64,000 bases of DNA from Paraphysomonas bandaiensis (Eukaryota; Protista; Chrysophyceae), in contig CBFFRP010000096.1 of NCBI GenBank assembly GCA_965644295.1, forward strand, positions 62,001 to 126,000, in the 5' to 3' direction. Position 1 is the stretch's first letter, and every line of letters starts with the position of its first letter. This document shows, one piece after another, positions 32,955-53,144 of the stretch. The notes beneath the pieces were generated by a model. The model worked only from the letters and a program-made list of their open reading frames with translations, was not told where the DNA came from and made no database searches. The position numbers and the translations under genes are program-made.

Positions 32955-35290
32955 TTACGCTATCATTTGTTCCTTTGAGCTAACAATTGTTTCCTCGAGC
33001 TACAAAGAATTCTTAAGAATATACTGAAGTATAATAAGAATCTTACCTTGATAACGACTTGATAATTGGAGTCATCATCGGAATCATATCCATCTCTGAG
33101 TGCGATTCTTGCCGGCCGGGTGGCTTCAAATGCTGCACGCCTTACAGCCATTCTATTAAGGAACTCCTCAGCCAGTTGTCTTCTCTCAGCCTGTACAGCG
33201 GTGTTCAGTTGCTGCATTCGCTCCTGATCTTCCTTTTCGAATATCTTCTCGTACTTGCGTAGGTTTTTCACGATTAGCTTCTTCTGCTCCACCGACAACA
33301 AATCCTTAGGGCGAGGTCGCCAAGCGAACTGGTAAAGCTTCTCCTTGCGAACTTGGCAAATTGGGGTGCCTTGGAAAGTGTATAAATTGTATCCGTCCTC
33401 CGGCATACCACGGAGGTTACTTTGGCGCAACGGAGTAATAGTAGCAGTAGCAAGGATACGGCCGGAGGGATCCCATACTATACGATTGCATCTATCATGA
33501 CGGCGGGAGGCCATTGTCACATTGTTATCGACATCATGCAGATCAAAGTGTGCCGAATCTTGCTGCACGTACGCTATACAGACTACCCCACCTGCAGGCG
33601 ACCATATCACTTCATTGCACTGCTTGCCTTTGAGTGAAAACAGAAGCGACAATTCCTTGGTAACTGCTTTTTTCTTTCCAGCTACCCCGGGGCCGTAAAA
33701 CGATATCGTTGGTGAACGAGCCTCTCCATGAACCAAACAAAGACGTGACCCTGAAGGTTCCCATTGAACGTCCAGCACGGTATCTGCCAGTTCTTCTTGC
33801 TCAACGGGAACCTCCGGTTCGCATACTCGGAAGAACATAAGTACATAAGAGCGTTTCTTGCCAGAAATCTTAGTCATACGAACGCAGAGATACTTGCCCT
33901 CATTCTGCCATACCATGCGCCCGTCCTGTACATCGAATACCTTACGAGAGCAAATCGGTGTTCGATCAGGCATTTGAATAATATTTATCATTGCAGGATG
34001 ATTTCCGAACGCTGGTGACCAGTAGGAAATATAGTTCCCCTTTGGAGACCAAACAAAATCCAAAGCATCCTTGGCTGCGAGAGACTTCTTGTCGAGCAGG
34101 CCCATTGAGGGAAGAGAATATACCTGAATGATTCCTGTTCCGAGTCTGGCCACGTAATTGCCATCAGGAGACCACTTGAGTCTATTAGGATCCTGGAGCG
34201 CTGTGACTTTACTGAGCGGTATGTTGCTGTGATTGGTGTTACCCTCTGCAATTGTGCATATTCCTCTGCCATCTAGAGATACAATCCGCCCCCTCATAGG
34301 TCTCTCCACTCTCTTCCCACCTGGTTTCTCCTCAGATATCTCAGCCTGAACCTGGAAGTCTTTGTCTAAGGGATTCTTGAGCTTGAATGTACGCAGTTTC
34401 TCTCCACTGCGAATATCCCAAACAATAATGGCTTCGTTGGATGAATGGTCCTGAAACATGTAGGTGACCATGAAACGCTCACATGGGGAGAAGTCAACGA
34501 GTTCAACACCGGCATGCATGTATCGCCCCTGCGCCTCGAAATCTGGACCGCCCCAGAGCTTCACGCCTGGAGGGTGGAAGGTAGCCAGGTAGCTTCCATC
34601 AGGAGACCATTGTGTGTAACTCTCGCACCAGTGGCGGGGTTTCTCCCTCTCACCTCCATACACCAACTCCGGCTCATCACCTTGCACCTGGGTGCTCCAG
34701 GTTACCTCAGTTTCCTGCGCGTAGCGAACAACGAATTGGTCACGGCAGTGCTTATCACTCAACCAGCTAGTGGGGTCAGGGGATGGTTTAAAAGGAGGAA
34801 TAGGAGGGGGGCTAAATTCATCAGGGACGGCCTCTAATGTATCCATGTCACTGTACAAGTACACTTTGAAAATGTGATTTTTGTCAAGTGCATAGTTGTT
34901 TACAGTCTTTATAGCATGCTTGGCATCTGCAGCGGAAGGATACGTAACAAATGCACATCTGATAAGTAAATAAAATGATTATCAGGTAAGATATGAGTCA
35001 ATGAAGTCCACATACCCGGCAGTCTTTCCAGTCTCTTCATCTTCAGGCAGATAGAGTTCCACATTCTGATTAACAGCAGAGAAAACTTTATTAAGGAGCA
35101 AGTTTCTGAGCTTATCTATCCTCTTGGTGTCATTGAGAGCCACTACAGGGACATTATCTACTACTATAGTCGAGCTAAAGTCAGGAGCGAAGGGGGCCTT
35201 ATTAATCTCAGGCTCAAAGCCCTCTGGGTCCTCTGTGAGGTACTCGGCAATGTCGTTATAGTCAGGCAGCTGAGTGTAGTAGCTGTCCAT
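32955..35290 (-). CDS. EIF3B: Eukaryotic translation initiation factor 3 subunit B (PRT1)
   Basis: RRM (IVVDNVPVV...GKTAG|CAF), beta-propeller WCESYTQWSPDGSYLATFHPPGVKLWGG, C-terminal YQFAWRPRP...IVKNLRKYEKIF; last exon LEETIVSSKEQMIA*. Confidence 0.96.
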
Positions 35291-37431: not shown

Positions 37432-39353
37432 CTATTGATTTCGCTTACTTTTTCTACTGGGGCTGGACTGTGTAGAATTCATTTTGTCTTTCTTAGTAAC
37501 AATCAATTTGGAGATGTTCTTCACTGTACTGCGGTCAATATAATCGCTGCTACTAGTTACTTTCTTCGACGAATTCGATATGCCTTCGTCATAGCTCAAC
37601 GCCTGACGCGTGAAGTCACTCTCTGTTTTCACCTGCGCGGCAGGAACACGGACATTTTTCTCGGAGCAGTCGGGTACAGCAGTCATCAGGTTCATGAACA
37701 GTTGTTTCTGCAAACGATTATACCCGGGCAGTTTGTGAAGGCGCGATGTCTCAGAAGTATTGTCAGAGGAGGGGAGGGCGGAGTACTCTTGTACACTCGC
37801 ACTCATAGTGGAGAGGTCCTCTGGAGTTGCGTCTTTTAGCATGCGTTCACCGATCTGCTTGATGAGCTTGTTAATTTCGTCGTCCAATTTGTGCACCACA
37901 TCAGGAAGCTGCAAATCAAGATGATTACGACATGTCGAACAACTCATGTACAAAGACATGCAAATAGCCTCGTACTCACCATTTCAACCGAAACTGGTCT
38001 TCCACCATCTGGTATGAGGTCCTTGTTGACCTTCTGCAGAAATCTGGGGACTGCTCTCCGCAGACTCTCCACACCCTTGCGCATTCTCTGATCTCGCTCC
38101 CTGCAGTCGTCGCCTTCTTTCCGAGCAGAGGTAAGAGCTGCATCTTTCATGTCTACTTCCTGATACATTTGGCGATTAGAAGCCAACATTTGTAGCTTTC
38201 TTTGAGACCGCTCCAACAGATCTTCGATGCTTTGCTTCTTTGACTTGTGGTTGGCTAGCTGCTCCTTGAGGTCGGCCTGCACTTGATTGAGTCGCTCTAT
38301 TCGAGATGACTTGGAGTTGTAACTCGTAACTATGTCCTCGATCTGCTGGCGTGTGAGAGAAAATGAGCCATCCCGAGAGCTCGATATGTCAGTGGGAGAA
38401 GCACAGCTCTCGCCCCGTGCCCTTGGACTACTCTGTATCGCCGACTCGTGCCCATCCAGCATTCTGTGTCCCATCTTTGTCTCCAATTCTTGGTTGCCTT
38501 TAATTCTATCAAGAGTACTATGCAGACTTTGCCGCACGCGTTCCACAGACTGCTTTCCCTCCATCACCATGCTCTGTAGCTCCTGCATCTTCTGTTGACG
38601 CTGGTCTGTGCGGCTTTTAACAGTTTTGGTCAATACCTCTACATGGCGCTCCTCGGCCGCTAACTCGTGTTTACTCAGTCGTAAAGTACTTTCCAGTCCC
38701 GTATATTCCGCTTTGGCCTGATTCAATTGCTGTGTTAACACATGGGACTGGGCCTTACAGTCCATGATATCTTGCTCCAGTCGATTCGATAGGTACGTCA
38801 ACATGCTACGAGTTCTCGCCTCTGCTTGTATACTGTCCTCTACTGCATCAAGATCACTCTCAATTCCAGCAATGGCACGATTATGACTCGACATATTTTC
38901 TTCCTGAGTTACCATAAAACCTTCCAGTACCTTTTTGCTATCCAAAACATCAGCAAGCTCTCGTTCCTTAACAACATTGGCAGTCCGTATACCATCGTAT
39001 TCCTTTTGTAACGCCGCTAAAGCAGTGCGGGCTTTTTCCATTTCTGCAGACTGCGCTTGATTAATTTCTTTTTTCATGTTTAACAGTGCCGCAGCATCAT
39101 TTTCAAGGAGCTTATCTAGATCGTCAATGTTAGAGTTCATTTTTTTCCCTCTGGCTCTGGAATCCAGCTCCGCAGACTGAGAACCCTCTGACTCCACAAA
39201 TTTTCTCCCTTTGAATGTACCAGGCTTAGTAGCAGGGTTTCGGATTCCTAGTGTAAATTTGGATTTGGAAATGGAACTCTTAGATAACTGAAACTTTGAT
39301 GACGGTTGTTGTCTAGTGGACCCTCCACCGGGAACAATAGAAGTCATTGCCAT
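37432..39353 (-). CDS. Long coiled-coil protein (2 exons); function unknown, possibly axonemal docking-complex-like
   Basis: 469-aa ORF spliced (intron ~37912-37979) to LPDVVHKLDDEINKLIK...; heptad-rich central region. Confidence 0.65.
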
Positions 39354-39955
39354 CTTATAAGTGAGTTTCCTTTGTGTACTTTACTATAAGTCACTAGGAA
39401 TAGTTACAGTGAGGTTATGTTTGTGTATGAGGTGGGGCTGATATATATATATATACTCTGACAGTTACTGACTGCAGTAACAGTCACAGTAACCGTTTTT
39501 TTTCTTGAAGTACATGTGTATGTGTATGTGTATGTGAATGTATGCATAGTGTGGTGTGTATGTACTGCTCTCTACGTATGCATGTCTACGTATATCTCTG
39601 TATATGTCTGTATATGGATTAGTCGAGAAAATTTGAGGAAAATTTATGACTAGAACATCACACACAGCAACTCATCTGTCCATCTACCTCCCTGGGTAAC
39701 CCTGTAATACGGCCGTGGACTACAGCAGGTAGGAGTATGTATATGATACAGTTACATAGAGATCCAGTGCATGTATATACATATACACAGTACAGAGTCG
39801 AGTCTGTGTTGCACTCTCATCACTCCACACAATACACACTAACATCGGAACTATCAGACATATGTAAGGAAGTAGCTGGTGCTGTAAGGTTCGTTGAACA
39901 TGTGATGCCCTATTTGATCTGATGGTGGTGCATACAGAGCTATTAACAGATAGAT

Positions 39956-42900
39956 ATGTCAGCTTATGTTGTAGACGGTGAGACTTGTATACATATGATA
40001 CCACTCCATATAACTCATTATTCAGGAATGGTGATTGCAAGAGAAATATTTAACGAGTTAAAGGAAGAGATTTCTTCTAATGCAACGGCTCCCTGTTTGG
40101 CGATAGTGTCAATTGGATGCACAGATGACACTTTGAAGCGCATTGCTGCGAAAAAGACACTATGCAGCGATCTTTCCATTAAGACACTGGATATATCGCT
40201 CCCATGTAATGTGTCTCGTGAAGAAGTTCTTGCAAAAGGTATGCTGTATGCTACTTGGCATATACATTGATGCACTAACGTATATACTTTAAGTTGATGA
40301 GCTAAATATGGATCGTTCTGTTCATGGCATTGTACTAGAGCAACCTTTTCCAGATAGCATAAACATCCAAGATGTGGTAGAGAAAATTTCTAGAGGAAAA
40401 GATGTTGAAGGGCTACACTCTAGTAATATCGCGCAGCTGACAAACACGAAGGTTGACTGGTCTGCTAAGCGGTCGGCCTGGGACTCCCCTCAATCGGATT
40501 ATCACGCGATGTGCATACCTCAGGCTTGCATCGAGATACTAGATAGGCTTGGAATAGATATCGAGGGTAAAGACGCAGTGGTTGTTGGGAGGGCACACAA
40601 TGTTGCAGTTCCTTTGAGCCTTCTTCTAATGCATCGGAATGCCACAGTTACCATTGCACACTGCTGTACCCGCAACCTCCCAGCTGTTATTGGTAGGGCA
40701 GACATCCTGGTTAGCGCACTAGGTCGACCAGAATTTATCAAAGGCGCATGGTTGAAACCGGGTGCAACCGTCATCGATCTTGGTACTACCCGTGTGAACT
40801 CCACGGAGTCTACTTTCAAGGTGGTGGGTGACTGCGAATTCTCTTCGTGTAAGAGCAAAGCTGGGTTCATGACAGCACCAGGTCAAAACAATGGAATTGG
40901 TACTCTAGCCTTCTATATGGTTCTCAGAAATCTTCTAAACTGTACAACTGCTGGACCTGACACTGATAGTGTTGATGGCGCGGTTGATCCGTATTTGCGT
41001 TACGGTGGGGCGTACCTTGGTGACCCCAAAGACACCACGAACTTCAAGTATGTGACTTTCTCTGAAATGCCTAAGTTTACAGATGAGCACAAGTCAGCCA
41101 TGAGTCGTCACCTAACGCCAGATCTATTCAATCAGCTAAAGGACGTCAAGTCTTCTCGCGGGTACACCCTTTCTAATGTGATCATGACAGGTGTGGTCAC
41201 ACCTCACCTTGGGGTAGGTGCAACTGCTGGGGATGAGAGCTGCTGGGAGGTATTCAAACCGTTGTTCAACCCAATAATCAAAGACTGGCATGGATATGAC
41301 CCGGAGACACAGACCCATCCCAAAGACTTGGATCCCTCGAAGTTGGTGTTTACAGAGGAGCAAAGGAAGTTGTTTGAGGATTTTGTGGTGTCCACTCGCA
41401 TACGGGCTGCCCGAAACATATCCGGTTACTCTTTACCAGCTGGCACTGATGATAAAGATCGTGCAGCGGTAGAGGCGGTACTCAAACAGGCATTTGATGG
41501 CCTTGATGGGGAATTGTCGGGTACTTATTATGAGTTAGGAGATCTGACCACTGAGCAACGGGATTTCTTGCTTGAGAAAGGATTTCTCTTCCAAATCCCC
41601 TCTGCAAGGAACTTACTCACAGGGGCAGGTGCAGCACGCTCGTGGCCTAACAACAGAGGTATCTTTCACAATTCCGCACAAACAGCCCTGGCATGGGTCA
41701 ACGAGGAGGACCACTGTCGTATTATCTCCATGGAGATGGGCGGAGATATTCCCTCAGTGTTTACTCGCTTCTGCGCACTTTCTGATGCCCTGGAGGCCTC
41801 TGCGAAGAGAAATGGTACGGAACTAATGTGGAATGAACGTTTAGGCTTTTTGGGTACCTGTCCCTCTAATCTTGGAACTGGGCTACGGGCGTCTGTAATG
41901 ATTCGACTTCCTGAGTTTAATAAACTCTTGGAGGGCGGGAATCAGGAGGACAAAGAACTGCTAGACCAGGTATGCTCCGCATACGACCTACAGCCGCGTG
42001 GTTCAGCTGGAGAGCATTCTGCAGCCGTTGGAGCGAAGTTTGATATATCTAACAAACAGCGACTTGGGTTTTCAGAAGTGCAGCTGGTTCAAAAGATGAT
42101 AGACGGTGTTTCGAAAGTAATTGAATACGAAACTTTACTGGCTCAAGGTGTCGCGCCTGGTGATATACGCCGTCGGCTTTCAGATAGTATGGCTGATCCG
42201 TATTTGCGTTACGGTGGGGCGTACCTTGGTGACCCCAAAGACACCGCGAACTTCAAGTATGTGACTTTCTCTGAAATGCCTAAGTTTACAGATGAGCACA
42301 AGTCAGCCATGAGTCGTCACCTAACGCCAGATCTATTCAATCAGCTAAAGGACGTCAAGTCTTCTCGCGGGTACACCCTTTCTAATGTGATCATGACAGG
42401 TGTGGTCACACCTCACCTTGGGGTAGGTGCAACTGCTGGGGATGAGAGCTGCTGGGAGGTATTCAAACCGTTGTTCAACCCAATAATCAAAGACTGGCAT
42501 GGATATGACCCGGAGACACAGACCCATCCCAAAGACTTGGATCCCTCGAAGTTGGTGTTTACAGAGGAGCAAAGGAAGTTGTTTGAGGATTTTGTGGTGT
42601 CCACTCGCATACGGGCTGCCCGAAACATATCCGGTTACTCTTTACCAGCTGGCACTGATGATAAAGATCGTGCAGCGGTAGAGGCGGTACTCAAACAGGC
42701 ATTTGATGGCCTTGATGGGGAATTGTCGGGTACTTATTATGAGTTAGGAGATCTGACCACTGAGCAACGGGATTTCTTGCTTGAGAAAGGATTTCTCTTC
42801 CAAATCCCCTCTGCAAGGAACTTACTCACAGGGGCAGGTGCAGCACGCTCGTGGCCTAACAACAGAGGTATCTTTCACAATTCCGCACAAACAGCCCTGG

Positions 42901-45900
42901 CATGGGTCAACGAGGAGGACCACTGTCGTATTATCTCCATGGAGATGGGCGGAGATATTCCCTCAGTGTTTACTCGCTTCTGCGCACTTTCTGATGCCCT
43001 GGAGGCCTCTGCGAAGAGAAATGGTACGGAACTAATGTGGAATGAACGTTTAGGCTTTTTGGGTACCTGTCCCTCTAATCTTGGAACTGGGCTACGGGCG
43101 TCTGTAATGATTCGACTTCCTGAGTTTAATAAACTCTTGGAGGGCGGGAATCAGGAGGACAAAGAACTGCTAGACCAGGTATGCTCCGCATACGACCTAC
43201 AGCCGCGTGGTTCAGCTGGAGAGCATTCTGCAGCCGTTGGAGCGAAGTTTGATATATCTAACAAACAGCGACTTGGGTTTTCAGAAGTGCAGCTGGTTCA
43301 AAAGATGATAGACGGTGTTTCGAAAGTAATTGAATACGAAACTTTACTGGCTCAAGGTGTCGCGCCTGGTGATATACGCCGTCGGCTTTCAGATAGTATG
43401 GCTGATCCGTATTTGCGTTACGGTGGGGCGTACCTTGGTGACCCCAAAGACACCGCGAACTTCAAGTATGTGACTTTCTCTGAAATGCCTAAGTTTACAG
43501 ATGAGCACAAGTCAGCCATGAGTCGTCACCTAACGCCAGATCTATTCAATCAGCTAAAGGACGTCAAGTCTTCTCGCGGGTACACCCTTTCTAATGTGAT
43601 CATGACAGGTGTGGTCACACCTCACCTTGGGGTAGGTGCAACTGCTGGGGATGAGAGCTGCTGGGAGGTATTCAAACCGTTGTTCAACCCAATAATCAAA
43701 GACTGGCATGGATATGACCCGGAGACACAGACCCATCCCAAAGACTTGGATCCCTCGAAGTTGGTGTTTACAGAGGAGCAAAGGAAGTTGTTTGAGGATT
43801 TTGTGGTGTCCACTCGCATACGGGCTGCCCGAAACATATCCGGTTACTCTTTACCAGCTGGCACTGATGATAAAGATCGTGCAGCGGTAGAGGCGGTACT
43901 CAAACAGGCATTTGATGGCCTTGATGGGGAATTGTCGGGTACTTATTATGAGTTAGGAGATCTGACCACTGAGCAACGGGATTTCTTGCTTGAGAAAGGA
44001 TTTCTCTTCCAAATCCCCTCTGCAAGGAACTTACTCACAGGGGCAGGTGCAGCACGCTCGTGGCCTAACAACAGAGGTATCTTTCACAATTCCGCACAAA
44101 CAGCCCTGGCATGGGTCAACGAGGAGGACCACTGTCGTATTATCTCCATGGAGATGGGCGGAGATATTCCCTCAGTGTTTACTCGCTTCTGCGCACTTTC
44201 TGATGCCCTGGAGGCCTCTGCGAAGAGAAATGGTACGGAACTAATGTGGAATGAACGTTTAGGCTTTTTGGGTACCTGTCCCTCTAATCTTGGAACTGGG
44301 CTACGGGCGTCTGTAATGATTCGACTTCCTGAGTTTAATAAACTCTTGGAGGGCGGGAATCAGGAGGACAAAGAACTGCTAGACCAGGTATGCTCCGCAT
44401 ACGACCTACAGCCGCGTGGTTCAGCTGGAGAGCATTCTGCAGCCGTTGGAGCGAAGTTTGATATATCTAACAAACAGCGACTTGGGTTTTCAGAAGTGCA
44501 GCTGGTTCAAAAGATGATAGACGGTGTTTCGAAAGTAATTGAATACGAAACTTTACTGGCTCAAGGTGTCGCGCCTGGTGATATACGCCGTCGGCTTTCA
44601 GATAGTATGGCTGATCCGTATTTGCGTTACGGTGGGGCGTACCTTGGTGACCCCAAAGACACCGCGAACTTCAAGTATGTGACTTTCTCTGAAATGCCTA
44701 AGTTTACAGATGAGCACAAGTCAGCCATGAGTCGTCACCTAACGCCAGATCTATTCAATCAGCTAAAGGACGTCAAGTCTTCTCGCGGGTACACCCTTTC
44801 TAATGTGATCATGACAGGTGTGGTCACACCTCACCTTGGGGTAGGTGCAACTGCTGGGGATGAGAGCTGCTGGGAGGTATTCAAACCGTTGTTCAACCCA
44901 ATAATCAAAGACTGGCATGGATATGACCCGGAGACACAGACCCATCCCAAAGACTTGGATCCCTCGAAGTTGGTGTTTACAGAGGAGCAAAGGAAGTTGT
45001 TTGAGGATTTTGTGGTGTCCACTCGCATACGGGCTGCCCGAAACATATCCGGTTACTCTTTACCAGCTGGCACTGATGATAAAGATCGTGCAGCGGTAGA
45101 GGCGGTACTCAAACAGGCATTTGATGGCCTTGATGGGGAATTGTCGGGTACTTATTATGAGTTAGGAGATCTGACCACTGAGCAACGGGATTTCTTGCTT
45201 GAGAAAGGATTTCTCTTCCAAATCCCCTCTGCAAGGAACTTACTCACAGGGGCAGGTGCAGCACGCTCGTGGCCTAACAACAGAGGTATCTTTCACAATT
45301 CCGCACAAACAGCCCTGGCATGGGTCAACGAGGAGGACCACTGTCGTATTATCTCCATGGAGATGGGCGGAGATATTCCCTCAGTGTTTACTCGCTTCTG
45401 CGCACTTTCTGATGCCCTGGAGGCCTCTGCGAAGAGAAATGGTACGGAACTAATGTGGAATGAACGTTTAGGCTTTTTGGGTACCTGTCCCTCTAATCTT
45501 GGAACTGGGCTACGGGCGTCTGTAATGATTCGACTTCCTGAGTTTAATAAACTCTTGGAGGGCGGGAATCAGGAGGACAAAGAACTGCTAGACCAGGTAT
45601 GCTCCGCATACGACCTACAGCCGCGTGGTTCAGCTGGAGAGCATTCTGCAGCCGTTGGAGCGAAGTTTGATATATCTAACAAACAGCGACTTGGGTTTTC
45701 AGAAGTGCAGCTGGTTCAAAAGATGATAGACGGTGTTTCGAAAGTAATTGAATACGAAACTTTACTGGCTCAAGGTGTCGCGCCTGGTGATATACGCCGT
45801 CGGCTTTCAGATAGTATGGCTGATCCGTATTTGCGTTACGGTGGGGCGTACCTTGGTGACCCCAAAGACACCGCGAACTTCAAGTATGTGACTTTCTCTG

Positions 45901-47018
45901 AAATGCCTAAGTTTACAGATGAGCACAAGTCAGCCATGAGTCGTCACCTAACGCCAGATCTATTCAATCAGCTAAAGGACGTCAAGTCTTCTCGCGGGTA
46001 CACCCTTTCTAATGTGATCATGACAGGTGTGGTCACACCTCACCTTGGGGTAGGTGCAACTGCTGGGGATGAGAGCTGCTGGGAGGTATTCAAACCGTTG
46101 TTCAACCCAATAATCAAAGACTGGCATGGATATGACCCGGAGACACAGACCCATCCCAAAGACTTGGATCCCTCGAAGTTGGTGTTTACAGAGGAGCAAA
46201 GGAAGTTGTTTGAGGATTTTGTGGTGTCCACTCGCATACGGGCTGCCCGAAACATATCCGGTTACTCTTTACCAGCTGGCACTGATGATAAAGATCGTGC
46301 AGCGGTAGAGGCGGTACTCAAACAGGCATTTGATGGCCTTGATGGGGAATTGTCGGGTACTTATTATGAGTTAGGAGATCTGACCACTGAGCAACGGGAT
46401 TTCTTGCTTGAGAAAGGATTTCTCTTCCAAATCCCCTCTGCAAGGAACTTACTCACAGGGGCAGGTGCAGCACGCTCGTGGCCTAACAACAGAGGTATCT
46501 TTCACAATTCCGCACAAACAGCCCTGGCATGGGTCAACGAGGAGGACCACTGTCGTATTATCTCCATGGAGATGGGCGGAGATATTCCCTCAGTGTTTAC
46601 TCGCTTCTGCGCACTTTCTGATGCCCTGGAGGCCTCTGCGAAGAGAAATGGTACGGAACTAATGTGGAATGAACGTTTAGGCTTTTTGGGTACCTGTCCC
46701 TCTAATCTTGGTACTGGGCTACGGGCGTCTGTAATGATTCGACTTCCTGAGTTTAATAAACTCTTGGAGGGCGGGAATCAGGAGGACAAAGAACTGCTAG
46801 ACCAGGTATGCTCCGCATACGACCTACAGCCGCGTGGTTCAGCTGGAGAGCATTCTGCAGCCGTTGGAGCGAAGTTTGATATTTCTAACAAACAGCGACT
46901 TGGGTTTTCAGAAGTGCAGCTGGTTCAAAAGATGATCGACGGTGTTTCGAAAGTAATTGAATATGAAATGTTGCTTGCTCAAGGTGTCGCGCCTGGTGAT
47001 ATAAGAAATCGCTTTTAG
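39956..47018 (+). CDS. Fusion protein (~2,320 aa): degenerate FolD (methylene-THF dehydrogenase/cyclohydrolase) domain + five tandem phosphagen (ATP:guanidino) kinase domains
   Basis: Exons 39956-39977, 40026-40238, 40294-47018 in frame. FolD-like VVDG, VHGIV, KDVEG, GKDAVVVGR, NATVTIAH, WLKPGATVIDLG. Each kinase unit has STRIRAARN, WPNNRGIF, WVNEEDH, CPSNLGTG, RGSAGEH, DISNKQRLG. Confidence 0.93.
40985..47015 (+). repeat. Tandem array of 5 x 1,209 bp (403 aa) coding units
   Basis: Units start at 40985, 42194, 43403, 44612, 45821; internal units look identical by eye, with variants only in unit 1 (accacg vs accgcg) and the 3' part of unit 5. Confidence 0.98.
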
Positions 47019-47297: not shown

Positions 47298-47685
47298 TGT
47301 AAATGATTATCAGTACCTGGTGGGCCTCAGACATCTTGATGGACACCTGTATTATGTTACCACCAGAGTGATAGAGAGAAGAGGAGTCATTGTTGCATAT
47401 AGGAAACTAGATACGGAAGGAAATACTACCGAGGAGCAAACTCCAATTCATATCAAAGATGTAGTAAAGATGACTCACTCTACAAAGTGTCCGACAAATT
47501 TGTAGAGTGAGTATCTTTACTACATCTTTGATATGAATTGGAGTTTGCTCCTCGGTAGTATTTCCTTCCGTATCTAGTTCCTATATGCAACAATGACTCC
47601 TCTTCTCTCTATCACTCTGGTGGTAACATAATACAGGTGTCCATCAAGATGTCTGAGGCCCTCCAGGTACTGATAATCATTTACA
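47298..47685. repeat. ~188-bp inverted repeat (fold-back) of Copia sequence with ~12-nt spacer
   Basis: 47298-47486 is the reverse complement of 47499-47685 apart from one substitution and two 1-bp indels. Confidence 0.95.
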
Positions 47686-50186
47686 CTCTCTGCTGTTTCT
47701 GAGGTGTCGATTTGTAGATTATCTATTTCGTCGAAATACTCCTGTGAACGCTCTGGAATAGACTCATCAAAGTTAACGTTTACTGTAACAATAATAGCAT
47801 CCAGCAGGTCTGGAATATATATTTGGTGTCCAACAGGTTGTTGACATTGTCCCATATAGTATCCAGGCTTTCCCTTTTCTTTCCACTCTTTGCGGCGCAG
47901 CTCCTTCGGCACGATAGCCCATGCCTTGCAGCCCCAGATCTTCAAGTCACTCACATCTGGTGCGGTTCCAGTAATATACTCAACAGGTGAGATGTATCCT
48001 TTCGTTGTCTTCCTAGGTAACCTGCTGATCAGATATACAGCATGCAAGACTGCTGAACCAAAATACTGATGGCATGCCACTATCGAGCAAGATAGCAAGG
48101 GCCATCTCCTTCACTGTACGATTAGTGTGTTCCGATAGCGAATTCATTTCGGGTGTGTCACGTGGAGTCCAAGTAACTTGTACAGTCTTTGTGCTGGTGG
48201 TTTCACGTAAGTACTGCCTGACATGTTGCCCTACTAATTCTCCTGCGTCATCTGCATGATATCGTCGTAGTTGCAATCCTTCTTTGACAAGTTGGGTCTC
48301 TACCATGTCCTTCATACACTTTAACACTTCACTCCCAGTCTTGTTTTTTAAGCCATAAGCCCATACATGTTTTGCATCACTGTGCTTGAATAGTAACACA
48401 TGTTTGTAGCCTTCCATCGATGGCGTGTTTAGGACTTCCATCGTATCTGCACTAAGCACCCCTCTCTCATTTGGGTTGTTGTCTAAGTTCATCAACTGGC
48501 GTGGAGTCCTGAAGTTCTTTCTGGTGAGTTTCGACCGCATGCAGGTATTACATTTGCATATCGTTTTTTTATGCTTTTTCCTGAAATATTTCTTGTCCAG
48601 ATTTATTCCATCAACGAGGCCTCGGCGGTCGGACTCAGTCAGTTTATCATAGTTGACATGGCCAAGTCTTTTGTGCCATAAAATTCGCTGGTCATCAAAT
48701 CCCTGCTCCTCAAGTGCTACTGAGGATTCTTCTCAAGCTGAAGTAAGTCTTCGAGTCGAACTGGATATAATCCATTAACACTTCTCTGTCTAATGAGTGT
48801 CTTCTTCGTAGTCTTATTTCGAATGACGACTTCATCATTATTGAACGTCACAACACAGCCCCTATCTGTGATGCTCTTGAGGTTCTTACTTGCTTCAGGT
48901 GCGTAGTACACCTTTTTAAAGCTTCCTACATCGCCAACACTGTGTATTGACAGTTTACCTTTGTTCGCTGTGGACATCTGCCTATCAGCGCGCTGAAGGT
49001 TGGTCATGTGGTTTTTGGAGGTGAGGATCATCTTGTTGCACCCGCTGTCTAAATAAATAACATCTGACATGCTCTGTGCTAGATTCACCTCTTCTTCCAC
49101 ACATATCATCGATTCATATCCCGCCTCATCTTCTGAATCATGTACAGACACTCGCGGTTTCTTCTTTTTCTTGTAGGGTGCCGTTTCACTTCTAGGGTCT
49201 CGCCCCCGTTTAGAACTGACCACTGCAGCTTTAGCAGTCTTCAAGTGGAAGCAGTCTTTAGTCTGATGGCCTGGGATATCACATATCTCACACACAGGTA
49301 GCTTAGTTTTGTAATCACCCCTGCTTCTGTGATCTCTATCTTTTCTCTGTGATCTTGTCCCCTTCATCCTCTTTATGACATGTTCTGGAGTCTTGCACTC
49401 CCTAGCAAAGTGGCCAAGTTTTTTGCACTTATTGCATCTGCCCTTTCTCTTGTGCTCTTTCCATTTACTGTCATCCACTGCTTGATTGACACTGTCTTCC
49501 CCTGAATTTTGCAACGCATGCTTGCCGAATGATGTGTTTTCATACCCTTTGATTAGGCTGCTTGCTCTTGCGTATGTCACATTGTTTGCTGTATACAGGC
49601 TGTGTGCTAGTTGGGAATATCTCTTGTCTGTGAGACCTTCCTTTAGTCGAGTGAGCTTGTCGTCTTCCGTGACTTCACGACCTAGATTCTCGAGAATCTT
49701 GGCCTGGGCTTCAACGCTGTCGACGAACTCTGCTCCTGACTGACTTGAGGTAATCTTCATTGAATTGAACTTTGTGACCTCTGCCTGTACTGTATTCTTT
49801 TCAACATTGAGAAATCTCTCTTCCAGTGCCTGTAGTAACGCTTTTGCTGTACTTCCTTCGTAGAGAGCCGCTGTTGTTCCTGCTTTTGGATGAGCATTGC
49901 ACACTTCCATCAGGAAGGAGTACGCGGTCTCGTTCCGGGTGTTCCAGAGTTTCTTCGCTTTGCGTAGTCGCTTCTTCTGTGCATCAGTCATATGAGCACC
50001 CGCTGAGACTGTAGAGTCTAGATCATGAATGTGCCTTGGTTTATCCTTTGAGAGGACAAGATGAGCTCGATTGTGTCTCATGAGGAATGAGGTGAAGAAC
50101 TTCTTGAATTTCTTGAAGTTCAGTTCCTCGAAGGGAGGTACCTTTGAGCCTGAGGCGACATTCGCGAAATTTCCATCCGCTACCAT
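47499..50186 (-). mobile_element. Degenerate Ty1/Copia LTR retrotransposon (gag-protease-integrase), truncated before RT; no LTR identified
   Basis: Gag Zn knuckles CNKCKKLGHFAREC and CEICDIPGHQTKDC, protease YLDSGC, GAG-pre-integrase WHKRLGH...C.C..C, integrase D..D..E region (ADTM, YHADDAGEL, PEMNSLSE), SH3-like WGCKAW; PR-IN order; frameshifts. Confidence 0.92.
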
Positions 50187-51629: not shown

Positions 51630-53144
51630 ATGATGCATCGTATTGTCAACGGTCGTCACTCTGGAGGGTCTCTGCGGTATGCGCATAGACACTTAACGTC
51701 CTTACAAGAGCAGAACTCACAGGGCTTTGAGTTTACTATACTTAATGAAGGGAAGGCTGATAAGCAGCGATTGGGTGAATTAAAGACACCTCACGGCAGT
51801 ATTATGACTCCAGCATTTGTGTTTTGTGCGACTAAAGCTGCCATGAAAGGAATAACGCCTCAAACTCTTGTCGATGAAGATACACAGATAATATTATCCA
51901 ACACATACCATCTCATGCTGAATCCTGGAGCTGACTTAATTGATAGATTAGGAGGTTTGCATAAATTTACTGGATGGAACGGGCCAATGCTAACAGATTC
52001 TGGGGGCTATCAGATATTTAGTATGGGTCACGGGTCGGTAAGTGAAGAGATCAAGGGGAAGGGGGGTGGACGTCCTGTTGGATGGAACAAGACACTGCTG
52101 CGCATTGACGAGACGGGCGCGTCCTTCAAATCGTATGTGGACGGATCGATACACTACTTGACTCCTGAGCTATCTATTCAGATTCAAAGAAAGCTGGGAG
52201 CTGACCTGGTAGTGGTTCTGGACGAATGTACACCGTTTAACGTCGATAGGGAGTACACAGAACAGTCGATGCACCGATCGCATAGATGGGCGGACCGTTC
52301 CCTAGCGGAGTTCAATAGGAGTTCGCGGGATGATAGAAAGCAGGCTCTATATGGCATAGTCCAGGGGGGGGTGCACCGAGACCTGAGGGAAGAGAGCGCT
52401 GACTTTGTTAACTCTCGACCATTCTTTGGATCAGCGATAGGAGGTAGTTTGGGGGCAGACAGGGGCACCATGGGAAGGGTAGTTGCTTACACCAGGTCAT
52501 TACTTCGAGAGGATCGACCTGTGCATCTGCTTGGTATAGGGGGGGTGGGAGACATATTTCATGGTGTTAGACAGGGCATCGATACCTTTGATTGCGTGCA
52601 CCCGACCAGGTTGGGTAGACATGGGGGAGCGTTAGTTAAAGCTGAGTACTGGGAGAGAGAAGATGAGCACTTTGTTAGTAGTGACATTAGTAATGAAGGG
52701 TTAGTGGAGGAAACAGACATGACAGGAGTGGAGAAAGGCAGTCAGGAGGAGAGAGAACTTAGGAAAAGAAACAGTGTCGCGAAGGCGAAAAGAAGACAAA
52801 GAGAGCAGCAGGCAAAGGCCCTGGCTCATCGCAGTCCCCGACAACATATCAACTTGACGAAAGGTCCCTTTCGTGGCGATCCCAGACCAATCGATTCGTC
52901 TTGTCAATGCTACACATGTAGGAATTTCTCCAGGGGATACATTCATCACCTCTTTAAGAGTAATGAAATGCTTGGGCCTATGTTGGTTACTTCGCACAAC
53001 GTTCACTTCATGAATAAACTGATGTCTGACATCAGAACTGGAATTGCAAATGATACATTAGATGAGGTCGAGGCGCAATATGTTCCCGAGAATCTTCGTC
53101 ATAAGAAAATAGATGCAGCAGAATTGCCAAACCTTGTGTTATAG
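51630..53144 (+). CDS. tgt: Queuine tRNA-ribosyltransferase (tRNA-guanine transglycosylase), bacterial-like, intronless
   Basis: SNTYHL, TDSGGYQIFS, LDECTP, GIVQGG, AIGGSLG, HLLGIG, DTFDCVHPTR, Zn site CQCYTC...HN. Confidence 0.95.
   Translation: MMHRIVNGRHSGGSLRYAHRHLTSLQEQNSQGFEFTILNEGKADKQRLGELKTPHGSIMTPAFVFCATKAAMKGITPQTLVDEDTQIILSNTYHLMLNPGADLIDRLGGLHKFTGWNGPMLTDSGGYQIFSMGHGSVSEEIKGKGGGRPVGWNKTLLRIDETGASFKSYVDGSIHYLTPELSIQIQRKLGADLVVVLDECTPFNVDREYTEQSMHRSHRWADRSLAEFNRSSRDDRKQALYGIVQGGVHRDLREESADFVNSRPFFGSAIGGSLGADRGTMGRVVAYTRSLLREDRPVHLLGIGGVGDIFHGVRQGIDTFDCVHPTRLGRHGGALVKAEYWEREDEHFVSSDISNEGLVEETDMTGVEKGSQEERELRKRNSVAKAKRRQREQQAKALAHRSPRQHINLTKGPFRGDPRPIDSSCQCYTCRNFSRGYIHHLFKSNEMLGPMLVTSHNVHFMNKLMSDIRTGIANDTLDEVEAQYVPENLRHKKIDAAELPNLVL

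What the first reader, a model, noticed from the sequence alone, without database searches (positions are those of the whole stretch)
39956..47018. FolD-like domain fused to five tandem phosphagen kinases in one polypeptide
Seen: one reading frame joins a ~310-aa FolD-like domain to five complete ATP:guanidino phosphotransferase domains, with NEED, CPSNLGT and the Arg motifs intact. No intron separates the two parts (linker TTAGPDTDSVDGAV). Established: two- and three-domain contiguous phosphagen kinases exist (e.g. trimeric flagellar creatine kinase), and FolD is a homodimeric NAD(P)-binding folate enzyme. I do not know of a FolD-phosphagen kinase fusion. Inference: FolD could act as a dimerisation, anchoring or NAD(P)/folate-sensing module on a high-capacity ATP-buffering enzyme, coupling one-carbon/redox state to a phosphagen shuttle. 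There is no MG myristoylation start like that of flagellar CK. The short guanidino-specificity loop (TGVVTPHLGVG) is not creatine-kinase-like and fits arginine/taurocyamine-type enzymes better.
Basis: partly seen in the sequence, partly recalled or inferred. Interest (0 to 1): 0.9.

Follow-up and report, generated by a model that had tools for sequence, protein, structure and literature searches.

The report
Five-kinase energy enzyme with FolD-like head
A marine flagellate (Paraphysomonas or a very close relative) expresses one 255-kDa protein with five near-identical energy-buffering (phosphagen) kinases behind a degenerate copy of the folate enzyme FolD. The design is rare but conserved, and the FolD-like head more likely pairs or anchors the enzyme than does folate chemistry.

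Summary
One gene (ATG 39956, stop 47016-47018) encodes a FolD-like domain, a short linker and five complete phosphagen kinase units of 1209 bp. Units 2-4 are 100% identical in DNA.

Spliced RNA contigs from two studies correct the gene model. The same contigs run unbroken from the FolD-like part into kinase unit 1. The protein is 2,319 aa, 255.6 kDa.

The fusion is not an assembly accident. Three metagenomic contigs carry the same FolD-like + kinase layout with 1, 1 and 2 kinase units. They share an intron position, and both halves group together in trees.

All five kinase units keep every catalytic motif and sit nearest the creatine-kinase lineage, with a short specificity loop. The FolD-like domain keeps its fold and its catalytic Lys. 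It has lost the Tyr of YxxxK, the pterin-binding Asp and the PGGVGPMT loop. The genome keeps two canonical FolDs.

92 of 104 single-domain relatives start with an MGxxxS myristoylation leader, which the FolD-like domain replaces.

My reading: a dimerising or anchoring pseudo-enzyme head on a polydomain kinase. The unit number is unverified. This scan had already noted this same stretch in overlapping windows of this genome, not on other DNA.

The parts
39846..39888 (+). 5' UTR exon (at least this far upstream), followed by intron 39889-39937
   Evidence: Spliced RNA contig in run X6, joint 39886>39936 with GT..AG at cut +2. Boundaries GTTCG...ACAG read.
39938..39977 (+). Exon with the start codon (ATG 39956; an in-frame stop lies upstream). 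It encodes MSAYVVD and the first base of the next codon.
39978..40025 (+).
   Evidence: Joint 39976>40025, GT..AG at cut +1, in the X6 RNA contig. Sequence read.
40026..40238 (+). Exon encoding most of the FolD-like N-terminal (catalytic-type) domain. The catalytic Lys is kept; the Tyr of YxxxK is replaced by Arg.
   Evidence: Pfam THF_DHG_CYH 4e-06, below the curated cut-off. Alignment A2. PDB alignments.
40239..40293 (+). 55-nt intron (GTATGC...TTTAAG). The same phase-1 position is used in relatives L009 and L010.
   Evidence: Joint seen in RNA contigs of X6 and X10. Relatives' intron borders read.
40294..40982 (+). End of the FolD-like N domain, the FolD-like NAD(P)-binding-type domain (Pfam match at about 40503-40943) and the linker TTAGPDTDSVDGAV
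   Evidence: THF_DHG_CYH_C 3.2e-40. Human MTHFD1 DC domain E = 2e-35. AlphaFold2 pLDDT 83.7; Foldseek TM 0.72-0.79 to FolD/MTHFD1. Clade-specific substitutions in alignment A1.
40983..42191 (+). Phosphagen kinase unit 1 (403 aa)
42192..43400 (+). Phosphagen kinase unit 2 (DNA identical to units 3 and 4)
43401..44609 (+). Phosphagen kinase unit 3
44610..45818 (+). Phosphagen kinase unit 4
45819..47018 (+). Phosphagen kinase unit 5 (399 aa, diverged 3' end) and the stop codon TAG at 47016-47018

Best explanation
This is a genuine, spliced, expressed nuclear gene of a heterotrophic marine chrysophyte (Paraphysomonas or a very near relative). It encodes a 2,319-aa polydomain phosphagen kinase: five catalytically intact units of the creatine-kinase lineage, strung head to tail.

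In front of them sits a diverged FolD paralogue. It keeps the FolD fold and probably the FolD-type homodimer interface, but it has lost key folate-site residues. It most likely acts as a non-catalytic (pseudo-enzyme) oligomerising or anchoring head, not as a folate enzyme.

It occupies the position where single-domain relatives carry an N-myristoylated leader. The likely effect (inferred) is to concentrate many ATP/phosphagen transfer sites, ten per dimer, at one cellular site of high ATP turnover such as the flagellar apparatus.

The FolD-like + kinase fusion arose once and is conserved. The number of kinase units then grew independently by recent unequal crossing-over or homogenisation: 1, 1, 2 and 5 units in four lineages.

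Shown: architecture, splicing, transcription across the junction, conservation, motif state and fold. Inferred: dimerisation in vivo, loss of FolD activity, localisation, the guanidino substrate.
For: Architecture and motifs.

Transcription: spliced GT..AG contigs in two runs from two studies. One 1017-nt contig joins the 5' UTR, all FolD-like exons, the linker and the first 33 nt of unit 1. A poly(A) metatranscriptome contig also covers 40909-41014. The unit-to-unit joint is present in RNA in three runs.

Conservation:
- P0004/L001 has FolD-like + 1 kinase, with the frame open to the contig start.
- P0283/L009 has + 2 kinases; P0285/L010 has + 1 kinase.
- A phase-1 intron lies at the same site in the window, L009 and L010.
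- The fusion kinases form one side of a branch, SH-aLRT 90.
- The FolD-like domains form a clade with SH-aLRT 100 on a long stem.
- For the closest pair, dN is 0.26 (FolD-like) against 0.09 (kinase) with saturated dS, so the head is constrained.

Degeneration of the head:
- Asp of KDVDG becomes E or S in all six clade members, against D in all ten canonical FolDs.
- PGGVGPMT becomes PGQxxGxGxLxF with a 2-aa insert.
- CTP becomes CIP or CLP.
- Tyr of YxxxK is lost.
- The catalytic Lys is kept.
The genome has two canonical FolD genes with these motifs intact.

Fold kept: pLDDT 83.7, TM 0.72-0.79 to MTHFD1/FolD.

Homodimer model: ipSAE 0.47 against a best control of 0.00. That mark was reached by 21 of 30 proteins solved as pairs of one chain and by 0 of 23 solved as single chains. 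Contacts agree at 89% or more between runs; pLDDT is 57-60.

Leader replacement: 92 of 104 single-domain relatives start with MG (91 fit the MGxxxS-type test), followed by a roughly 43-aa leader before DPYLxYGG, where the units begin. The genome's own single-domain paralogues start MGAGAS.

Organism: the paralogue on contig C414 is 100% identical over 448 aa to an MMETSP1103 Paraphysomonas transcript.
Against: - No protein-level evidence shows a 255-kDa product.
- The RNA evidence consists of short de Bruijn contigs that stop at the repeat. No single molecule is shown to span the FolD-like part through unit 5.
- The dimer model may pass from memory of solved FolD dimers, and its pLDDT is only 57-60.
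- The catalytic Lys and much of the Rossmann motif are retained (GR[SA]xxV, HS/C-x-T), so a changed rather than lost activity, or NAD(P) binding, is not excluded.
- Two clade members lack a kinase (P0289 with a proline-rich tail; P0134 next to G6PD). The head therefore has a role of its own that I cannot name.
- Kinase contig depth is 7-9 times the FolD-like contig depth in two runs but about 2 times in a third. That does not fit a simple 5:1 expectation.
Confidence: 0.6

Rival explanations
1. The FolD-like domain is a working NAD(P)(H)-binding sensor or regulator. It tunes the attached kinases to redox or one-carbon state.
For: The Rossmann-type motif is largely kept in the clade: GRSxxV(G/S)xP and HSST in relatives, GRAHNVAVP and HCCT in the window. 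The fold is kept. The head is under purifying selection. One stand-alone member lies beside G6PD, an NADPH producer.
Against: The window's own copy has lost the Ser and Gly of the glycine-rich loop and the Ser of HS(R/K)T. The PGGVGPMT loop is rebuilt in all members. From my memory of the human DC301 structures, not tested here, that loop lines the nicotinamide and pterin sites. No tool here measures ligand binding.
Confidence: 0.12
2. The FolD-like domain is still an active methylene-THF dehydrogenase/cyclohydrolase. The protein would then be a true bifunctional metabolic fusion.
For: The catalytic Lys is invariant in all 12 sequences of A2. The Gln of VQLPLP is kept in three clade members. 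P0289's N domain still scores 103 bits against Pfam THF_DHG_CYH.
Against: The invariant Asp, the Tyr of YxxxK, PGGVGPMT, CTP and GIN are all replaced across the clade. The window's N-domain exons score below the Pfam cut-off: 27.4 and 19.1 against 32.8. PDB similarity of the N-domain exon is only E about 0.02-0.08. Two canonical FolDs elsewhere in the genome cover the housekeeping role.
Confidence: 0.08
3. The count of five units is an assembly or strain artefact. The array is real, but its true length in the sequenced cells differs, or varies between strains.
For: Units 2-4 are 100% identical over 3.6 kb, which short reads cannot resolve. The ratio of kinase to FolD-like contig depth is 8.7 (X6), 7.1 (X10) and 2.3 (X15). 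Run X1 shows three variant paths at 41037/41039 in roughly equal depth, including a variant (41039 A) that is absent from the window. The relatives carry 1-2 units.
Against: The assembly places five units in a contig of at least 126 kb with unique flanks, and unit 5 has its own diverged end. Depth of Logan contigs is explicitly a poor measure. At least two tandem units are certain from the joint contigs.
Confidence: 0.25
4. The long ORF is a polyprotein-like precursor, or hosts internal starts. The working products would then be single-unit kinases freed by cleavage at the RRRLSDSM|ADPYL junctions, or made from internal transcripts starting at the in-frame Met before each unit.
For: Every inter-unit junction carries an in-frame Met one residue before DPYL and a basic RRR stretch. 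P0283 also has a Met three residues before its second unit. RNA depth over the units exceeds five times the head in two runs.
Against: Contiguous two- and three-domain phosphagen kinases are known to work as single polypeptides (established knowledge; two-domain structures 4rf6 and 4wo8). There is no evidence for a protease site. Depth of contigs is unreliable. The unit-to-unit joints are transcribed.
Confidence: 0.08

Closest known systems
Sea-urchin sperm flagellar creatine kinase (three contiguous CK domains, N-myristoylated)
   Same: Several complete phosphagen kinase domains lie in one polypeptide, with an N-terminal device that is not a kinase. The units belong to the creatine-kinase lineage: the best single-domain PDB scores are CK-B at 305 bits.
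   Different: Five units rather than three, nearly identical in DNA. The N-terminus is a roughly 300-aa FolD-like domain instead of a myristoylated Gly. The specificity loop is four residues shorter than in CK, so creatine is unlikely to be the substrate. My knowledge of the sea-urchin enzyme is from memory (Wothe, Quest, Shapiro and colleagues), not tested here.
Two-domain arginine kinase (Anthopleura japonicus, PDB 4rf6) and two-domain taurocyamine kinase (Schistosoma, PDB 4wo8)
   Same: These are tandem contiguous phosphagen kinases solved as single chains. They have a short specificity loop like the one here. Review PMC12467219 calls polydomain phosphagen kinases a growing class.
   Different: The per-domain score is lower (204-243 bits) than to creatine kinases. 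They have no foreign N-terminal domain, only two units, and the units are diverged from each other.
N-myristoylated single-domain protist phosphagen kinases (for example P0003 of Paraphysomonas, and relatives in Mallomonas, Ochromonas, Ectocarpus and the Mesodinium transcriptome)
   Same: 75-83% identical to each unit, with the same motifs and loop. Two such genes lie in the same genome.
   Different: They are single units with an MGxxxS start and a roughly 43-aa leader. In the fusion clade the FolD-like domain stands in place of that leader.
FolD / MTHFD1 dehydrogenase-cyclohydrolase domain
   Same: Same fold (TM 0.72-0.79). Same two-domain layout. The catalytic Lys is kept. The same lineage-type insertion is present as in the genome's canonical FolDs. 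A FolD-like homodimer is modelled.
   Different: Replaced: the Tyr of YxxxK, the Asp of KDVDG, PGGVGPMT, CTP and GIN. A 4-aa deletion in the N domain is shared by the clade. The clade sits on a long stem branch and is fused to kinases.
Flagellum-targeted phosphagen kinases of protists (Trypanosoma brucei AK3; Phytophthora infestans kinases)
   Same: An N-terminal extension decides where a phosphagen kinase works (PMC4517888 abstract). Kagda et al. 2018 is cited in PMC12221091.
   Different: Those extensions are short targeting peptides, not a folded enzyme-derived domain. Localisation of the present protein is unknown.

Membership tests
Phosphagen (ATP:guanidino) kinase family | N-terminal helical domain plus C-terminal catalytic domain (Pfam PF02807 + PF00217) | tested here: met
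   Five copies of each in the ORF, E = 4e-126 and E = 0.
Phosphagen (ATP:guanidino) kinase family | Reactive Cys in CPSNLGT, the NEED(H) motif, and the conserved Arg residues of the nucleotide site | tested here: met
   All five units carry NEEDH, CPSNLGTGLRAS, STRIRAARN, QPRGSAGEHS and SNKQRLGFSE. These align with the same motifs in CK-B, arginine kinase and taurocyamine kinase.
Phosphagen (ATP:guanidino) kinase family | Reversible phosphoryl transfer between ATP and a guanidino compound | not testable with these tools
   Needs an enzyme assay. The substrate is unknown.
Creatine kinase proper | Full-length guanidino-specificity loop (no deletion), as in TGVDNPGHPxIMTVG | tested here: not met
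   The alignment to human CK-B shows a four-residue deletion: TGVVTP-H---LGVG. So the units are of the CK lineage by overall score, but are not filed as creatine kinase.
Contiguous polydomain phosphagen kinases | Two or more complete kinase units in one uninterrupted reading frame, transcribed together | tested here: met
   One ORF with five units. The unit-to-unit joint is present in RNA contigs of three runs.
Contiguous polydomain phosphagen kinases | N-myristoylation start (MG...), as in flagellar CK | tested here: not met
   The protein starts MSAYVVDG. This is a feature of the flagellar CK example rather than of the class.
FolD (methylene-THF dehydrogenase/cyclohydrolase) | Both Pfam domains above their curated cut-offs | tested here: inconclusive
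C domain 137.5 bits (cut-off 27): met. The N domain is split by an intron and its pieces score 27.4 and 19.1 bits (cut-off 32.8).
FolD (methylene-THF dehydrogenase/cyclohydrolase) | YxxxK motif (Tyr and catalytic Lys) | tested here: not met
   The Lys is invariant. The Tyr is replaced by Arg here and by Ser or a gap in clade relatives, while all eight canonical FolDs keep it.
FolD (methylene-THF dehydrogenase/cyclohydrolase) | Asp of KDVDG and the PGGVGPMT loop (substrate and cofactor site) | tested here: not met
   Asp becomes Glu here, and E or S in all six clade members. PGGVGPMT becomes PGQNNGIGTLAF. All ten canonical sequences keep both.
FolD (methylene-THF dehydrogenase/cyclohydrolase) | FolD fold and homodimer through the NAD(P)-binding domain | tested here: inconclusive
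   Fold: pLDDT 83.7, TM 0.72-0.79 to FolD/MTHFD1. Dimer: ipSAE 0.47 against a best control of 0.00, a mark reached by 21 of 30 solved pairs of one chain and 0 of 23 single chains. Contacts agree at 89% or more; pLDDT 57-60. The pass may be from memory.
FolD (methylene-THF dehydrogenase/cyclohydrolase) | Dehydrogenase and cyclohydrolase activity | not testable with these tools
   Needs an assay.

The most novel reading that the evidence does not exclude
The FolD-like head is not inert. It would be a repurposed NAD(P)(H)- or pterin-like-ligand-binding module that switches or localises a ten-site phosphagen kinase dimer according to the cell's redox or one-carbon state. Alternatively it would catalyse a new reaction in making the still unidentified phosphagen of these protists. 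Either way it would define a new class of enzyme-derived regulatory domain for energy-buffering kinases.
Probability: 0.12. Interest if true: 0.8.

Novelty: new variant of a known kind. Interest (0 to 1): 0.55.

Why it matters
Phosphagen kinases are the classic devices for buffering and shuttling ATP. In the work I know, polydomain forms have been studied with two or three units, in animals and a few parasites.

Here a free-living bacterivorous flagellate carries a five-unit version with a folded, enzyme-derived head. The layout is conserved in at least three other uncultured protists. The same genome also holds two other four-unit arrays, two myristoylated single-unit genes and one gene with a presequence-like N-terminus.

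This offers three things:
- a natural series (1, 2 and 5 units on the same head) to test what domain multiplication buys;
- a clean case of a metabolic enzyme turned into a probable scaffold;
- a prompt to identify the phosphagen used by chrysophytes and other marine protists, which is not known to me.

It does not overturn any principle.

Tried and rejected
- Tandem Repeats Finder found nothing because the 1209-bp period exceeds its 500-bp limit. The repeat finder and a script were used instead.
- A scan of JGI metagenome contigs with the FolD-like clade alignment returned 80 loci. Of these, 74 carry the canonical PGGVGPMT and none has the clade signature or a kinase motif. It added no new family members.
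- The representative-library search with the FolD-like part gave mostly canonical FolDs at 51% identity or less. Only P0134 was of the clade.
- Paper searches gave nothing specific. I tried the two Pfam names together, protist phosphagen kinases, polydomain terms, and Paraphysomonas with kinase terms.
- dN/dS could not be computed properly because dS is saturated in every pair. Only dN and a lower bound on dS for one pair are usable.
- RNA contig depth as a copy-number or stoichiometry measure is rejected as unreliable. The ratios are 8.7, 7.1 and 2.3, and the tool itself warns against this use.
- Minus-strand ORFs inside the gene (for example 40520-40870) were considered and dismissed as chance frames inside a conserved coding region.
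- Contamination or a bacterial origin is rejected: spliceosomal introns, retroelement neighbours and eukaryotic relatives.
Full report
**Observation**

The region holds an ORF at 39956-40270 and a 2236-aa ORF at 40308-47018 on the + strand. Translation shows a FolD-like stretch, the linker TTAGPDTDSVDGAV and five almost identical kinase units.

Pfam gives THF_DHG_CYH_C (3.2e-40), five ATP-gua_PtransN and five ATP-gua_Ptrans on the long ORF. It gives a weak THF_DHG_CYH hit on the upstream ORF.

The repeat period is 1209 bp. Units 2-4 are identical in DNA, unit 1 differs at 2 bases, and unit 5 at about 21 bases clustered at its 3' end. Each unit carries every motif I checked: NEEDH, CPSNLGTGLRAS, STRIRAARN, QPRGSAGEHS, SNKQRLGFSE.

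**Gene model and expression**

Twenty public runs hold this stretch or a part of it. I laid four of them on 39600-42190. Two runs of 'organism A', from different studies, contain spliced contigs. These define three GT..AG introns:
- 39889-39937, in the 5' UTR;
- 39978-40025, 48 nt and in frame;
- 40239-40293, 55 nt.

With the RNA-supported splices the protein starts MSAYVVDG|MVIAREI, a typical FolD N-terminus with no leader. It is 2,319 aa, 255.6 kDa.

I computed the joined translation only in local scripts, for frame, length and mass.

One 1017-nt RNA contig runs from the 5' UTR through all FolD-like exons and the linker to 41014, which is 33 nt into unit 1. There the de Bruijn contig must stop, because the repeat begins. 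A poly(A) metatranscriptome contig covers 40909-41014 as well. The head-to-tail joint of two units is present in RNA of three runs.

So the junction and the tandem arrangement are transcribed. No single molecule spanning the whole gene is shown.

**The fusion is conserved**

A search with one unit found P0004 (83% identical), whose precomputed Pfam list included the FolD C domain. Its 2.3-kb contig, L001, has an open frame from the contig edge through a FolD-like domain, a linker and one kinase to a stop.

A search scored on the FolD-like part found two more:
- P0283/L009, FolD-like + two kinases, on an 11.8-kb metagenome scaffold;
- P0285/L010, FolD-like + a 110-aa linker + one kinase.

Further points tie these together:
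- The window, L009 and L010 share a phase-1 intron at the same codon, just before the (D/N/S)ELN motif.
- In a tree of 52 kinase sequences the fusion kinases form one side of a branch (SH-aLRT 90). The window's units and P0283's two units each cluster by genome, so the multiplications are independent.
- L009's two units differ at only 5 of the first 1150 bases and diverge at the ends, the same pattern as here.
- The FolD-like domains form a clade with SH-aLRT 100 on a long stem. That clade also contains two members without a kinase: P0289, an MMETSP transcript with a proline-rich tail, and P0134/L011, which lies next to G6PD in a tandem duplication.

A scan of JGI metagenome contigs added no further members. 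The family is rare.

**State of the FolD-like head**

The C-terminal part matches the human MTHFD1 DC domain at 2e-35. The N-domain exon matches only at E about 0.02-0.08.

Alignments with eight to ten canonical FolDs show the following:
- The catalytic Lys is invariant.
- The Tyr of YxxxK is lost across the clade.
- The Asp of KDVDG becomes E or S.
- PGGVGPMT is rebuilt with a 2-aa insert.
- CTP becomes CIP or CLP, and GIN becomes GTT or GTS.
- A 4-aa deletion is shared by the clade.

The roles of these residues (pterin and nicotinamide site) are from my memory of the human DC301 and E. coli FolD structures, not tested here.

The genome keeps two canonical FolD genes with all motifs intact. 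The head still folds as FolD: AlphaFold2 pLDDT 83.7, and Foldseek TM 0.72-0.79 to MTHFD1/FolD. It evolves about three times faster than the kinase but is constrained: dN 0.26 against 0.09, with saturated dS.

A homodimer model of the exon-4 piece gave ipSAE 0.47 against a best control of 0.00. That mark was reached by 21 of 30 proteins solved as pairs of one chain and by 0 of 23 solved as single chains. The runs agree in at least 89% of contacts, and pLDDT is 57-60. The interface centres on the strand ATVTIAH pairing with itself. Because FolD dimers are solved, the pass may be from memory. It shows likeness, not binding.

**What the head replaces**

Of 104 complete single-domain relatives, 92 begin with MG, and 91 of these fit the MGxxxS-type myristoylation test. 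They carry a conserved leader of about 43 aa before DPYLxYGG, exactly where the units here begin. The same genome has two such genes starting MGAGAS, and one with a presequence-like N-terminus.

So the kinase's N-terminal device varies in this family. In the fusion clade that slot is filled by the FolD-like domain. This is my main reason to read the head as a localising or oligomerising module.

**Kind of kinase**

A unit scores 305 bits against human CK-B. It scores 275 against lombricine kinase and against the arginine kinase 3ju5 (from memory, the CK-derived sea-cucumber enzyme). It scores 204-243 against single arginine or taurocyamine kinase domains. It aligns end to end with CK, including the C-terminal helix, but has a four-residue deletion in the specificity loop.

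It therefore belongs to the CK lineage, with a loop suited to a larger guanidino substrate. The substrate is unknown.

**Organism and genomic context**

The paralogue on contig C414 is 100% identical over 448 aa to an MMETSP1103 transcript with taxon id 36769, the genus Paraphysomonas. The genome is therefore Paraphysomonas or very close to it: a colourless, bacterivorous chrysophyte flagellate.

The 62.6-Mb assembly holds 16 or more kinase domains: this array, two four-unit arrays with long acidic N-termini, and three single genes. The other paralogues are only 71% identical in DNA, so RNA contigs at 95% or more come from this array alone.

Other long polydomain kinases with 3-5 units exist among public predicted proteins, none with FolD. 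A 2025 review calls polydomain phosphagen kinases a growing class (PMC12467219). I found no paper on a FolD-kinase fusion.

**Open points**

- The unit count of five rests on the assembly.
- Contig depth ratios of kinase to head are 8.7, 7.1 and 2.3 in three runs. One run shows a unit variant that is absent from the window. Copy number may therefore differ between strains, or there may be internal transcripts. An in-frame Met precedes each unit.
- These depth figures are weak evidence, and the tool warns against using them this way.

**Verdict**

The protein is best seen as a new variant of the known polydomain phosphagen kinases, with a pseudo-enzyme FolD-like head that probably dimerises or anchors it.

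This same stretch had been noted several times by this scan in overlapping windows of the same genome, not on other DNA.

Noticed in passing
G000:C298 (L002:3881-8902, +) and G000:C78 (L007:2375-9643, -): There are two further polydomain phosphagen kinase genes in the same genome, each with four units of 1050 bp. Each follows a long acidic, repetitive N-terminal region (about 270 and 1000 aa); one starts MGKSRNS. Their units keep CPSNVGT but have NGNDH in place of NEEDH, so they may be catalytically altered.
   Followed up: partly
G000:C414 (L093:1568-2911, -), G000:C78 (L092:1439-2890, +), G000:C297 (L094:1575-2921, +): There are three single-domain phosphagen kinase genes. Two carry an MGAGAS myristoylation-type start and are 81% identical to the array units. 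The third has a presequence-like N-terminus (possibly mitochondrial). The C414 product is 100% identical to a Paraphysomonas MMETSP1103 transcript.
   Followed up: partly
proteins P0003-P0120: 92 of 104 complete single-domain relatives from many protist lineages start with MG (91 fit the MGxxxS-type test) and share a conserved leader of about 43 aa (LPQYxILGGDxKF...). This points to a widespread, apparently undescribed, membrane-anchored phosphagen kinase family in marine protists.
   Followed up: partly
proteins P0096, P0117, P0129, P0120, P0314, P0321: The same kinase family occurs fused to other modules elsewhere. These are adenylate kinase (P0096 and P0117; P0129 is inferred from its length of 671 aa only), a PH domain (P0120), MORN repeats plus adenylate kinase (P0314, source label 'Rmarinus') and a kinesin motor domain (P0321).
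   Followed up: no
L011:1534-8048: In an AT-rich metagenome scaffold a G6PD gene and a stand-alone FolD-like gene of the same degenerate clade are duplicated in tandem as a pair. No kinase follows.
   Followed up: no
window 47577-50186 (-): Directly downstream of the kinase gene lie fragments of a copia-type LTR retrotransposon. They include a gag zinc knuckle, a Pol beta-barrel and a retroviral-integrase SH3-like domain.
   Followed up: no
window 51630-53141 (+) and 32966-34864 (-): Neighbouring genes are a queuine tRNA-ribosyltransferase (TGT, 2.7e-119) and an eIF2A-like WD-repeat protein. The ORFs at 37435-39353 (-) have no Pfam match.
   Followed up: no
window 40985-42190: Kinase-unit contigs are 7-9 times deeper than FolD-like contigs in two RNA runs, but only about 2 times deeper in a poly(A) metatranscriptome. 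Run X1 shows three unit variants at 41037/41039 in about equal depth, one of them absent from the window. Possible causes are copy-number polymorphism, internal transcripts or coverage bias; this is unresolved.
   Followed up: partly
window 42186-42194 and the same place in each unit: An in-frame ATG (Met) lies one residue before DPYL at each of the four unit-to-unit junctions, after a basic RRRLSDS stretch. P0283 also has a Met three residues before its second unit.
   Followed up: no
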